Assembly (NCBI RefSeq): GCF_046119375.1
Contig: NW_027362767.1
Coordinates: forward strand, 295,554,001 to 295,618,000
Source of the DNA: Phyllobates terribilis
Lineage: Eukaryota
Direction of reading: 5' to 3'
DNA length: 64,000 nucleotides
Below the pieces are notes generated by a model that did not search any database, was not told where the DNA came from, and was given only the letters and a program-made list of their open reading frames with translations. Shown one piece after another: positions 3,650-3,694 of this stretch (positions are counted from its first letter, which is position 1; each line of letters starts with the position of its first letter). The position numbers and the translations under genes were made by a program.

Positions 3650-3694
3650 TTTACACTGACGAGGGCCAACAGCCCGAAACACAGTGTCTGCAAA
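3650..3694 (+). ncRNA. Minimal type I hammerhead ribozyme with intact core; predicted cleavage after GUC at 3688
   Basis: tttaca-CTGACGA(3656-3662)-gggc-caaca-gccc-GAAA(3676-3679)-cacagtgtc-tgcaaa. Stem I is 5/6 paired, stem II has 4 bp, stem III is short with a 1-nt loop. Confidence 0.85.

What the first reader, a model, noticed from the sequence alone, without database searches (positions are those of the whole stretch)
3650..3694. Intact minimal hammerhead ribozyme in a ~332-bp tandem unit (retrozyme / satellite-2-like)
Seen: a complete type I core (CUGACGA, stem II gggc/gccc, GAAA, stem III acac-a-gtgu, GUC cleavage triplet at 3686-3688, stem I tttaca/tgcaaa) in a unit with a 332-bp period and no ORF. 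Known: newt satellite 2 and metazoan non-LTR retrozymes are tandem repeats of this size whose minimal hammerheads cleave as dimers, giving monomeric or circular RNAs. Inference: this is a frog member of such a family, possibly producing ~332-nt circRNA and mobilised by an RT in trans.
Basis: partly seen in the sequence, partly recalled or inferred. Interest (0 to 1): 0.85.

Follow-up and report, generated by a model that had tools for sequence, protein, structure and literature searches.

The report
Relic frog hammerhead-ribozyme repeat copy
A real hammerhead self-cleaving RNA motif sits at the stated place in a frog genome, but it lies in a small, rearranged leftover of an already known kind of amphibian repeat, so it is ordinary and this locus cannot release a circular RNA on its own.

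Summary
The motif is real. Rfam's type I hammerhead model (RF00163) matches exactly 3650-3694 (+) at 25.2 bits. That is below the gathering score of 34, but E is about 2e-5 for that family over the whole window. My own descriptor finds only this hit in 64 kb and none in 300 shuffles. Helix I continues into a 22-pair hairpin (3630-3713).

The context is weaker than claimed. The 332-bp period exists for only 1.3 units (3410-3839), and TRF calls no array. Two further copies of the ribozyme segment (3087-3131 +, 3277-3321 -) carry substitutions at invariant core positions. Both are locked inside a 534-nt near-perfect palindrome (2938-3471). The locus therefore has one complete ribozyme and fails the published criterion for an active retrozyme, which is two consecutive complete units. 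Folding models favour an inactive alternative hairpin by about 10 kcal/mol, in monomer and dimer alike.

The host is a neobatrachian frog, judged from neighbouring retrotransposon proteins. The best reading is a decayed monomer or relic of an amphibian type I hammerhead repeat (non-LTR retrozyme, satellite-2-like, Penelope-related). It is a new member of a known kind and of low interest. Conservation across the family could not be tested because no frog genome is on hand.

The parts
3650..3694 (+). Type I hammerhead ribozyme motif, copy B, with every invariant core position present. CUGACGA 3656-3662, helix II 3663-3675, GAAA 3676-3679, palindromic helix III 3679-3687, GUC 3686-3688, predicted cleavage after C3688.
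   Evidence: Sequence; Rfam RF00163 at 25.2 bits over exactly these bases; unique descriptor hit with 0 of 300 shuffles matching.
3630..3713 (+). Extended helix I hairpin domain around the ribozyme. Runs of 11 bp, 5 bp and 6 bp are separated by small internal loops; the loop after the 6-bp helix I stands where loop 1 of canonical type I hammerheads lies.
   Evidence: Fold at -35.6 kcal/mol, z=-6.6; 96.6% of cells paired across the three copies.
3410..3741 (+). One full 332-bp repeat unit: non-coding, 46.7% G+C, CpG observed/expected 0.33.
   Evidence: Direct-repeat spacing of 332; self-BLAST; composition.
3742..3839 (+). First 98 nt of a second unit, 93% identical to 3410-3507. It is cut off before it reaches another ribozyme.
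2938..3471 (.). Near-perfect palindrome made of partial units. Inner arms 3018-3191 and 3217-3390 are 97% complementary; outer arms 2938-3027 and 3382-3471 are 92% complementary; 25-nt centre. Its right arm runs straight into the full unit.
   Evidence: Inverted repeats I1 and I3; a 902-nt fold puts the whole stretch into one hairpin.
3087..3131 (+). Degenerate ribozyme copy A, with two substitutions at invariant core positions. Helices I, II and III and the GUC are kept.
   Evidence: Alignments; no hammerhead match at E<=10.
3277..3321 (-). Degenerate ribozyme copy Ainv, the mirror of copy A, with one substitution at an invariant core position.
   Evidence: Alignments; no hammerhead match at E<=10.

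Best explanation
The locus 2938-3839 is a small, rearranged and decaying remnant of an amphibian hammerhead-bearing repeat family. That family belongs to the class known as newt satellite 2 / metazoan non-LTR retrozymes, which is related to the terminal repeats of Penelope-like elements.

In that class (established knowledge, not shown here), multimeric transcripts of tandem units are cut once per unit by type I hammerheads. Their weak, palindromic helix III makes them pair up as double hammerheads. [quoted passage not shown]

Shown here: one copy (3650-3694) keeps the full consensus core and all helices. The locus holds only 1.3 units. The other two ribozyme copies have lost invariant core bases and are buried in a 534-nt palindrome.

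Inferred: this locus corresponds to the 'monomer derivative' category, not to an active source element. At most, a read-through transcript would be cut once after C3688, and inefficiently. There is no intact partner 332 nt away, and an alternative hairpin (3653-3658 with 3682-3687) that sequesters part of the core is predicted to be about 10 kcal/mol more stable than the catalytic fold.
For: Motif reality and significance.

Architecture matches the published description of canonical metazoan or amphibian type I hammerheads: 6-bp helix I, 4-bp helix II, and a short helix III with a palindromic loop that works as a dimer (PMC4209133; PMC7229834).

The unit is 332 bp, non-coding and below 50% G+C, like the retrozyme units of about 330 bp.

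Frog host.

Only one complete hammerhead, with two degenerate copies.

No TRF array.

The palindrome sequesters copy A.

Divergence between copy B and the other copies is 13-16% in the ribozyme and 8-11% in the flanks, so no constraint is visible at this locus.

Energies: catalytic fold -25.1 against MFE -35.6 kcal/mol; double hammerhead -61.4 against cofold MFE -74.0 kcal/mol.

The published criterion for activity (two consecutive complete units inside a TRF repeat) and the 'monomer' category are. Only 1 of 9 Xenopus retrozyme dimers cleaved in vitro.
Against: Family membership rests on architecture and on three copies in one window. No other genomic copies could be fetched, because metagenome, viral and protein collections gave nothing and no frog genome is searchable here.

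The Rfam score is below the gathering threshold.

The single compensatory pair in helix II is not statistically meaningful: 169 of 500 shuffles do as well.

Nearest-neighbour energies ignore the tertiary contacts that stabilise hammerheads, so the predicted inactivity may be overstated.

Transcripts from other loci could supply an intact partner in trans.
Confidence: 0.75

Rival explanations
1. One reading: an active non-LTR retrozyme locus whose transcripts self-cleave as dimers into a 332-nt RNA that is circularised and copied back into the genome.
For: Intact consensus core, 332-bp period and amphibian host. The class is documented in PMC7229834.
Against: Only one complete ribozyme is present. 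The next unit is cut off after 98 nt, so no second cleavage site lies 332 nt away. Upstream copies are degenerate and locked in a palindrome. TRF finds no array. The locus fails the published criterion for activity. The inactive alternative fold is favoured.
Confidence: 0.06
2. The locus is the remnant of a Penelope-like element insertion: a solo or 5'-truncated terminal repeat with the partial tandem and inverted arrangement typical of such insertions. It would not be a retrozyme in its own right. This rival overlaps with the best explanation, because retrozymes are proposed to derive from these terminal repeats.
For: Paired hammerheads 100-700 bp apart on opposite strands are reported for Penelope-related motifs (PMC4209133). 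Here, copies on opposite strands lie about 150 to 330 bp apart. Most Penelope insertions are 5'-truncated and keep one terminal repeat, and 24 of 57 Xenopus retrozyme families match Penelope termini.
Against: No reverse transcriptase or GIY-YIG frame lies within about 3.5 kb on either side; the longest frame there is 99 aa. The reverse transcriptases in the window are gypsy-like or LINE-like. The ribozyme has the canonical layout (4-bp helix II, helix III present), not the Penelope minimal layout.
Confidence: 0.14
3. A host-recruited (exapted) hammerhead that processes a host transcript, like the intronic hammerheads of amniotes.
For: None beyond the intact core.
Against: It lies in a repeat with degenerate sister copies. 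The surroundings are rich in transposable elements and no host gene was detected. No extra conservation of the ribozyme is seen.
Confidence: 0.03
4. A chance match to the hammerhead consensus.
For: The Rfam score is below the gathering threshold, and E is about 0.09 if all 4227 families over 64 kb are counted.
Against: None of 300 shuffles matches the descriptor. Helix I extends to 22 pairs. Sister copies keep the same helices, with one compensatory pair. Host and repeat size fit the known class.
Confidence: 0.02

Closest known systems
Amphibian non-LTR retrozymes (axolotl Rtz_331/Rtz_353; Xenopus families). Sources: Cervera & de la Pena 2020, PMC7229834; Li, Clavereau & Pollet 2026, bioRxiv 10.64898/2026.07.22.740005
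   Same: Type I hammerhead with 6-bp helix I, 4-bp helix II and a weak palindromic helix III that implies dimeric action. The unit is about 330 bp, non-coding and below 50% G+C. The host is an amphibian.
   Different: Only 1.3 units and one complete ribozyme, where the known cases form arrays of two to hundreds of units. The locus is fused to a 534-nt palindrome. Helix III is 3-4 pairs around a single central base, where HHR_Amex1 has one pair plus a tetraloop. Expression and circles are unknown. Sequence homology to described families could not be tested; the published Xenopus primers do not match.
Newt satellite 2 (Epstein & Gall 1987; dimer activity shown by Forster et al. 1988, as cited in PMC7229834)
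   Same: Repeat of about 330 bp carrying a type I hammerhead that is poorly active as a monomer.
   Different: Satellite 2 forms long arrays and has its own promoter (my recollection of the literature). Here there is a fragment with no array. A salamander-to-frog sequence relationship was not tested.
Minimal hammerheads in the terminal repeats of Penelope-like elements (Cervera & de la Pena 2014, PMC4209133)
   Same: Type I topology and dimer logic, frequent in frogs (about 9,000 in X. tropicalis), often solitary or paired on opposite strands.
   Different: Those motifs lack helix III and have a 7-8-bp helix II and a 4-5-bp helix I. This motif has the canonical layout, and no Penelope coding region is nearby.
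Rfam RF00163 Hammerhead_1
   Same: Full-length alignment to the model (positions 1-45 of 45) with all core positions matching.
   Different: 25.2 bits against a gathering score of 34. Helix II, loop 2 and one helix I pair depart from the model.

Membership tests
Hammerhead ribozyme, type I (Rfam RF00163) | Invariant core (CUGANGA, GAAA, cleavage triplet UH) in the right order | tested here: met
Hammerhead ribozyme, type I (Rfam RF00163) | Three helices around the core, with helix I open-ended | tested here: met
   Model alignment. Pair counts are 96.6% over three copies. As a monomer, helix III is only 3 pairs with a 3-nt loop.
Hammerhead ribozyme, type I (Rfam RF00163) | Score at or above the curated gathering threshold (34 bits) | tested here: not met
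   25.2 bits; absent from the gathering-threshold scan.
Hammerhead ribozyme, type I (Rfam RF00163) | Site-specific self-cleavage | not testable with these tools
   Thermodynamic models only: the catalytic fold is about 10 kcal/mol above the MFE.
Canonical metazoan type I hammerhead (as defined in PMC4209133) | About 6 bp in helix I then loop 1; 4 bp in helix II; short helix III with a small palindromic loop | tested here: met
   Sequence; fold; definition read.
Canonical metazoan type I hammerhead (as defined in PMC4209133) | Conserved tertiary contacts between loop 1 and loop 2 | not testable with these tools
   Loops are present (3647-3649 with 3695, and 3667-3671), but no comparator or 3D model was available.
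Penelope-like element minimal hammerhead | No helix III, long helix II (7-8 bp), short helix I (4-5 bp) | tested here: not met
   Helix II has 4 bp, helix III is present and helix I has 6 bp.
Penelope-like element minimal hammerhead | Lies in terminal repeats flanking an RT plus GIY-YIG reading frame | tested here: not met
   No frame longer than 99 aa in 690-7740. The reverse transcriptases in the window are gypsy-like or LINE-like.
Metazoan non-LTR retrozyme | Head-to-tail tandem repeats of a 150-450-bp unit | tested here: inconclusive
   A 332-bp period exists, but for only 1.3 units. TRF reports nothing.
Metazoan non-LTR retrozyme | At least two consecutive units, each with a complete hammerhead (criterion for 'active' in bioRxiv 10.64898/2026.07.22.740005) | tested here: not met
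   One complete motif only. The other two copies are degenerate and not at 332-bp spacing.
Metazoan non-LTR retrozyme | Non-coding, G+C below 50% | tested here: met
Metazoan non-LTR retrozyme | Multi-copy family across the genome, co-occurring with Penelope-like elements | not testable with these tools
   No frog genome collection is on hand. Exact-pattern scans and a protein-level proxy found nothing.
Metazoan non-LTR retrozyme | Expressed as unit-length linear and circular RNA | not testable with these tools
   No expression data available.
Newt satellite 2 | Long arrays of a unit of about 330 bp, homologous in sequence to the newt repeat | not tested
   Unit length matches (332). No array is in the window. 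No comparator sequence was available from a tool.

The most novel reading that the evidence does not exclude
The frog family behind this copy could be an undescribed retrozyme lineage in neobatrachian frogs. In it, a built-in alternative hairpin (3653-3658 with 3682-3687) would act as a conformational switch that keeps monomers and circles uncut. Palindromic derivatives such as 2938-3471 would yield long hairpin RNA that feeds small-RNA silencing of the family.
Probability: 0.08. Interest if true: 0.45.

Novelty: new member of a known kind. Interest (0 to 1): 0.18.

Why it matters
It adds one more frog locus to a class that has been catalogued since 1987 and surveyed across vertebrates in 2020-2026. 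Its practical value is for annotation. The standard Rfam gathering-threshold scan misses this motif, and the filtered 2-kb scan loses it as well. Amphibian hammerhead copies of this kind are therefore probably under-annotated. The locus also shows that a consensus-intact core does not make a source of RNA circles: the number, spacing and orientation of the copies decide that.

Tried and rejected
- **Rfam at gathering threshold, whole window, and at E<=10 over 2 kb:** no hammerhead hit. The match appeared only when 111 nt were searched, so the earlier absences are filter and threshold effects.
- **Family copies elsewhere:** exact-pattern scans with each helix I arm, chosen outside the core to avoid bias, found nothing in metagenome contigs (both scans used) or in viral contigs.
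- **Protein-level proxy:** the 99-aa frame across the unit was used to try to pull spurious gene calls from frog assemblies. It found none.
- **Published Xenopus retrozyme primers** (Supplementary Table 7) against the element: nothing beyond chance.
- **tRNA or SINE origin of the unit:** ARAGORN found nothing. A pol III B-box-like word at 3797-3807 is not above chance (27 of 100 shuffles) and is missing from the other copy.
- **Target-site duplication:** only a displaced 7-mer, which is not convincing.
- **Covariation:** one compensatory pair in helix II, not significant with three sequences.
- **Bacterial promoter/terminator scan:** not informative for a eukaryote.
- **Lunse et al. 2017 (PMC5785218):** not held.

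Full report
**1. Observation**

The bases at 3650-3694 (+) read as follows:
- helix I 5' strand, 3650-3655
- CUGACGA, 3656-3662
- helix II, GGGC/GCCC around a 5-nt loop, 3663-3675
- GAAA, 3676-3679
- a palindromic helix III, 3679-3687
- GUC, 3686-3688
- helix I 3' strand, 3689-3694

Helix I has 5 of 6 pairs, with one A.C mismatch.

Rfam's Hammerhead_1 model aligns over its full length to exactly these 45 bases. The score is 25.2 bits and E=1.6e-4 for 111 nt against 4227 families. Rescaled, E is about 2e-5 for this one family over the 64-kb window and about 0.09 if all families are counted. The score is below the gathering threshold of 34, so the standard scan is silent. A 2-kb scan lost the match to the speed filters.

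A descriptor of my own finds this single hit on both strands of the window and none in 300 dinucleotide-preserving shuffles. It requires the core, at least 4 bp in helix II closed by G-C, a paired or palindromic helix III, and at least 5 of 6 pairs in helix I. The motif is real and above chance.

**2. Anatomy beyond the 45 bases**

Helix I does not stop at 6 pairs. After a small internal loop (3647-3649 opposite 3695) come 5 more pairs and then 11 more. The result is a hairpin domain at 3630-3713 with -35.6 kcal/mol and z=-6.6.

This layout matches the canonical metazoan type I hammerhead as defined in PMC4209133: a 6-bp helix I followed by an internal loop, a 4-bp helix II, and a very short palindromic helix III. 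It is not the 'minimal' Penelope-type variant, which lacks helix III and has a 7-8-bp helix II. The word 'minimal' in the finding is therefore inexact.

**3. The repeat**

The 332-bp spacing exists: 3410-3507 and 3742-3839 are 93% identical. A self-BLAST of the unit gives this map:
- one full unit, 3410-3741
- the first 98 nt of a second unit, 3742-3839, after which similarity stops
- its mirror image at 3234-3375 (-)

The stretch 2938-3471 is one near-perfect palindrome. The inner arms are 97% complementary, the outer arms 92%, and the centre is 25 nt. TRF reports no array here. No further copy lies in the other 63 kb.

The unit has 46.7% G+C and is CpG-depleted, with observed/expected 0.33. 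Its only long frame is 99 aa with a GTG start, and it has no relatives.

**4. The sister copies**

Copy A (3087-3131, +) carries two substitutions at invariant core positions. Copy Ainv (3277-3321, -) carries one. Neither gives a hammerhead match even at E<=10. All their helices are kept. Helix II differs from copy B by one compensatory pair, which is suggestive but not significant with three sequences (169 of 500 shuffles do as well).

Copy B differs from the others by 13-16% inside the ribozyme and by 8-11% in the flanks. No constraint on the ribozyme is visible at this locus. The pattern looks like neutral decay, and copy B has simply not yet been hit in its core.

**5. Can this locus work?**

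Release of a unit-length RNA needs two cuts 332 nt apart. The next unit is cut off long before its ribozyme would begin, so no second site exists.

Helix III is too short for a stable monomer (3 pairs, 3-nt loop). It would need a partner copy for a double hammerhead, as in newt and axolotl. The only same-strand partner, copy A, has a degenerate core. In any transcript of the locus it is paired with its mirror copy in a hairpin with arms of about 255 bp.

ViennaRNA gives these energies:

| Form | Catalytic fold (kcal/mol) | Most stable predicted fold (kcal/mol) |
|---|---|---|
| Monomer | -25.1 | -35.6 |
| Dimer (double hammerhead) | -61.4 | -74.0 |

In the more stable fold, 3653-3658 pairs with 3682-3687, which sequesters three core bases and the 3' strand of helix III. 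Such models ignore tertiary contacts, so this is an indication and not proof.

The indication agrees with published data. Amphibian hammerheads cleave poorly as monomers, and only 1 of 9 Xenopus retrozyme dimers cleaved in vitro. By the published operational rule, an active retrozyme is a TRF repeat with at least two consecutive complete hammerheads. This locus is not active by that rule and corresponds to the 'monomer' derivatives described there.

**6. Host and neighbourhood**

A 1147-aa gypsy-type pol frame elsewhere in the window has neobatrachian frogs as its best named relatives:

| Species | Identity |
|---|---|
| Leptodactylus fuscus | 78% |
| Pristimantis euphronides | 73% |
| Ranitomeya imitator | 71% |
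| Eleutherodactylus coqui | 65% |

'Frog' is therefore supported, probably a hyloid species and not Xenopus. The species is undetermined.

The window is rich in transposable elements: gypsy-like, Tc1/mariner and LINE-like. No Penelope-like reverse transcriptase or GIY-YIG domain was found, and nothing longer than 99 aa is open within about 3.5 kb of the element.

**7. Interpretation**

Most likely (0.75), this is a decayed and rearranged remnant of an amphibian hammerhead repeat family of the satellite 2 / non-LTR retrozyme class. One ribozyme copy is still intact at the consensus level.

The main rival (0.14) overlaps with this reading: a remnant of a Penelope-like element's terminal repeat. 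It is supported by the opposite-strand pairing of copies and by the proposed derivation of retrozymes from such repeats. It is weakened by the canonical ribozyme layout and by the lack of any Penelope coding remnant.

The other readings are unlikely: an active circle-producing locus (0.06), an exapted host ribozyme (0.03), and chance (0.02).

**8. Limits**

The collections on hand hold no frog genome, and my pattern and protein-proxy searches found nothing.

**9. Novelty**

The class has been known since 1987. It was characterised as retrozymes in 2020 and surveyed in seven amphibians in 2026. This is at most a new member, and as a locus it is a relic.

I stopped doing so, and this report gives counts alone.
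Its result was negative and nothing rests on it.
- While reasoning I also recalled from memory a fragment of a published hammerhead construct.
The consensus lines printed by the alignment tool were not used.

Noticed in passing
window 2938-3471: A 534-nt near-perfect palindrome made of partial repeat units (arms about 255 nt, 92-97% complementary, 25-nt centre). It yields sub-threshold miRNA-precursor-like Rfam hits, which are generic for a long hairpin. Its origin is unexplained: it could be an inverted duplication, template switching or an assembly artefact.
   Followed up: partly
window 1-688 (-): A partial match to eukaryotic SSU rRNA (61 bits, above gathering) covering model positions 1-789 with large gaps and insertions. 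It looks like an rDNA-derived fragment or pseudogene at the window edge.
   Followed up: no
window 38546-42606 (+), 26962-32054 (+), 7744-11667 (-): Three Ty3/gypsy-like retrotransposon coding regions. One has a single 1147-aa pol frame (RT, RNase H, integrase). One has gag-like, RT/RNase H and integrase parts split over several frames. One is a partial reverse-strand pol, also split. The best named relatives are neobatrachian frogs.
   Followed up: partly
window 61513-63638 (-): A LINE-like reverse transcriptase (nearest solved structures are R2 and LINE-1 ORF2p), split over two overlapping frames. It is not Penelope-like.
   Followed up: partly
window 18425-19132 (+): A Tc1/mariner-type DDE_3 transposase fragment.
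   Followed up: no
window 44370-44803; 49716-50460; 26604-26735: Tandem arrays: a 27-nt unit x16 (with an 80-nt higher-order period), two blocks of units of about 130 nt, and a 51-nt unit x2.6.
   Followed up: no
window 3979-4253 and 4202-4978: Short inverted repeats (27-48 nt arms, 79-85% complementary) just downstream of the element, resembling MITE termini.
   Followed up: no
window 3424-3723 (+): A 99-aa GTG-start open frame runs through most of the repeat unit, including the ribozyme. It has no relative among 5.8 billion proteins and is taken as spurious.
   Followed up: yes
window 3650-3694: Method note: the hammerhead is invisible to Rfam at the gathering threshold, and the speed filters drop it when 2 kb is scanned. 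It appears only in a 111-nt scan. Amphibian copies of this kind may be widely under-annotated.
   Followed up: yes
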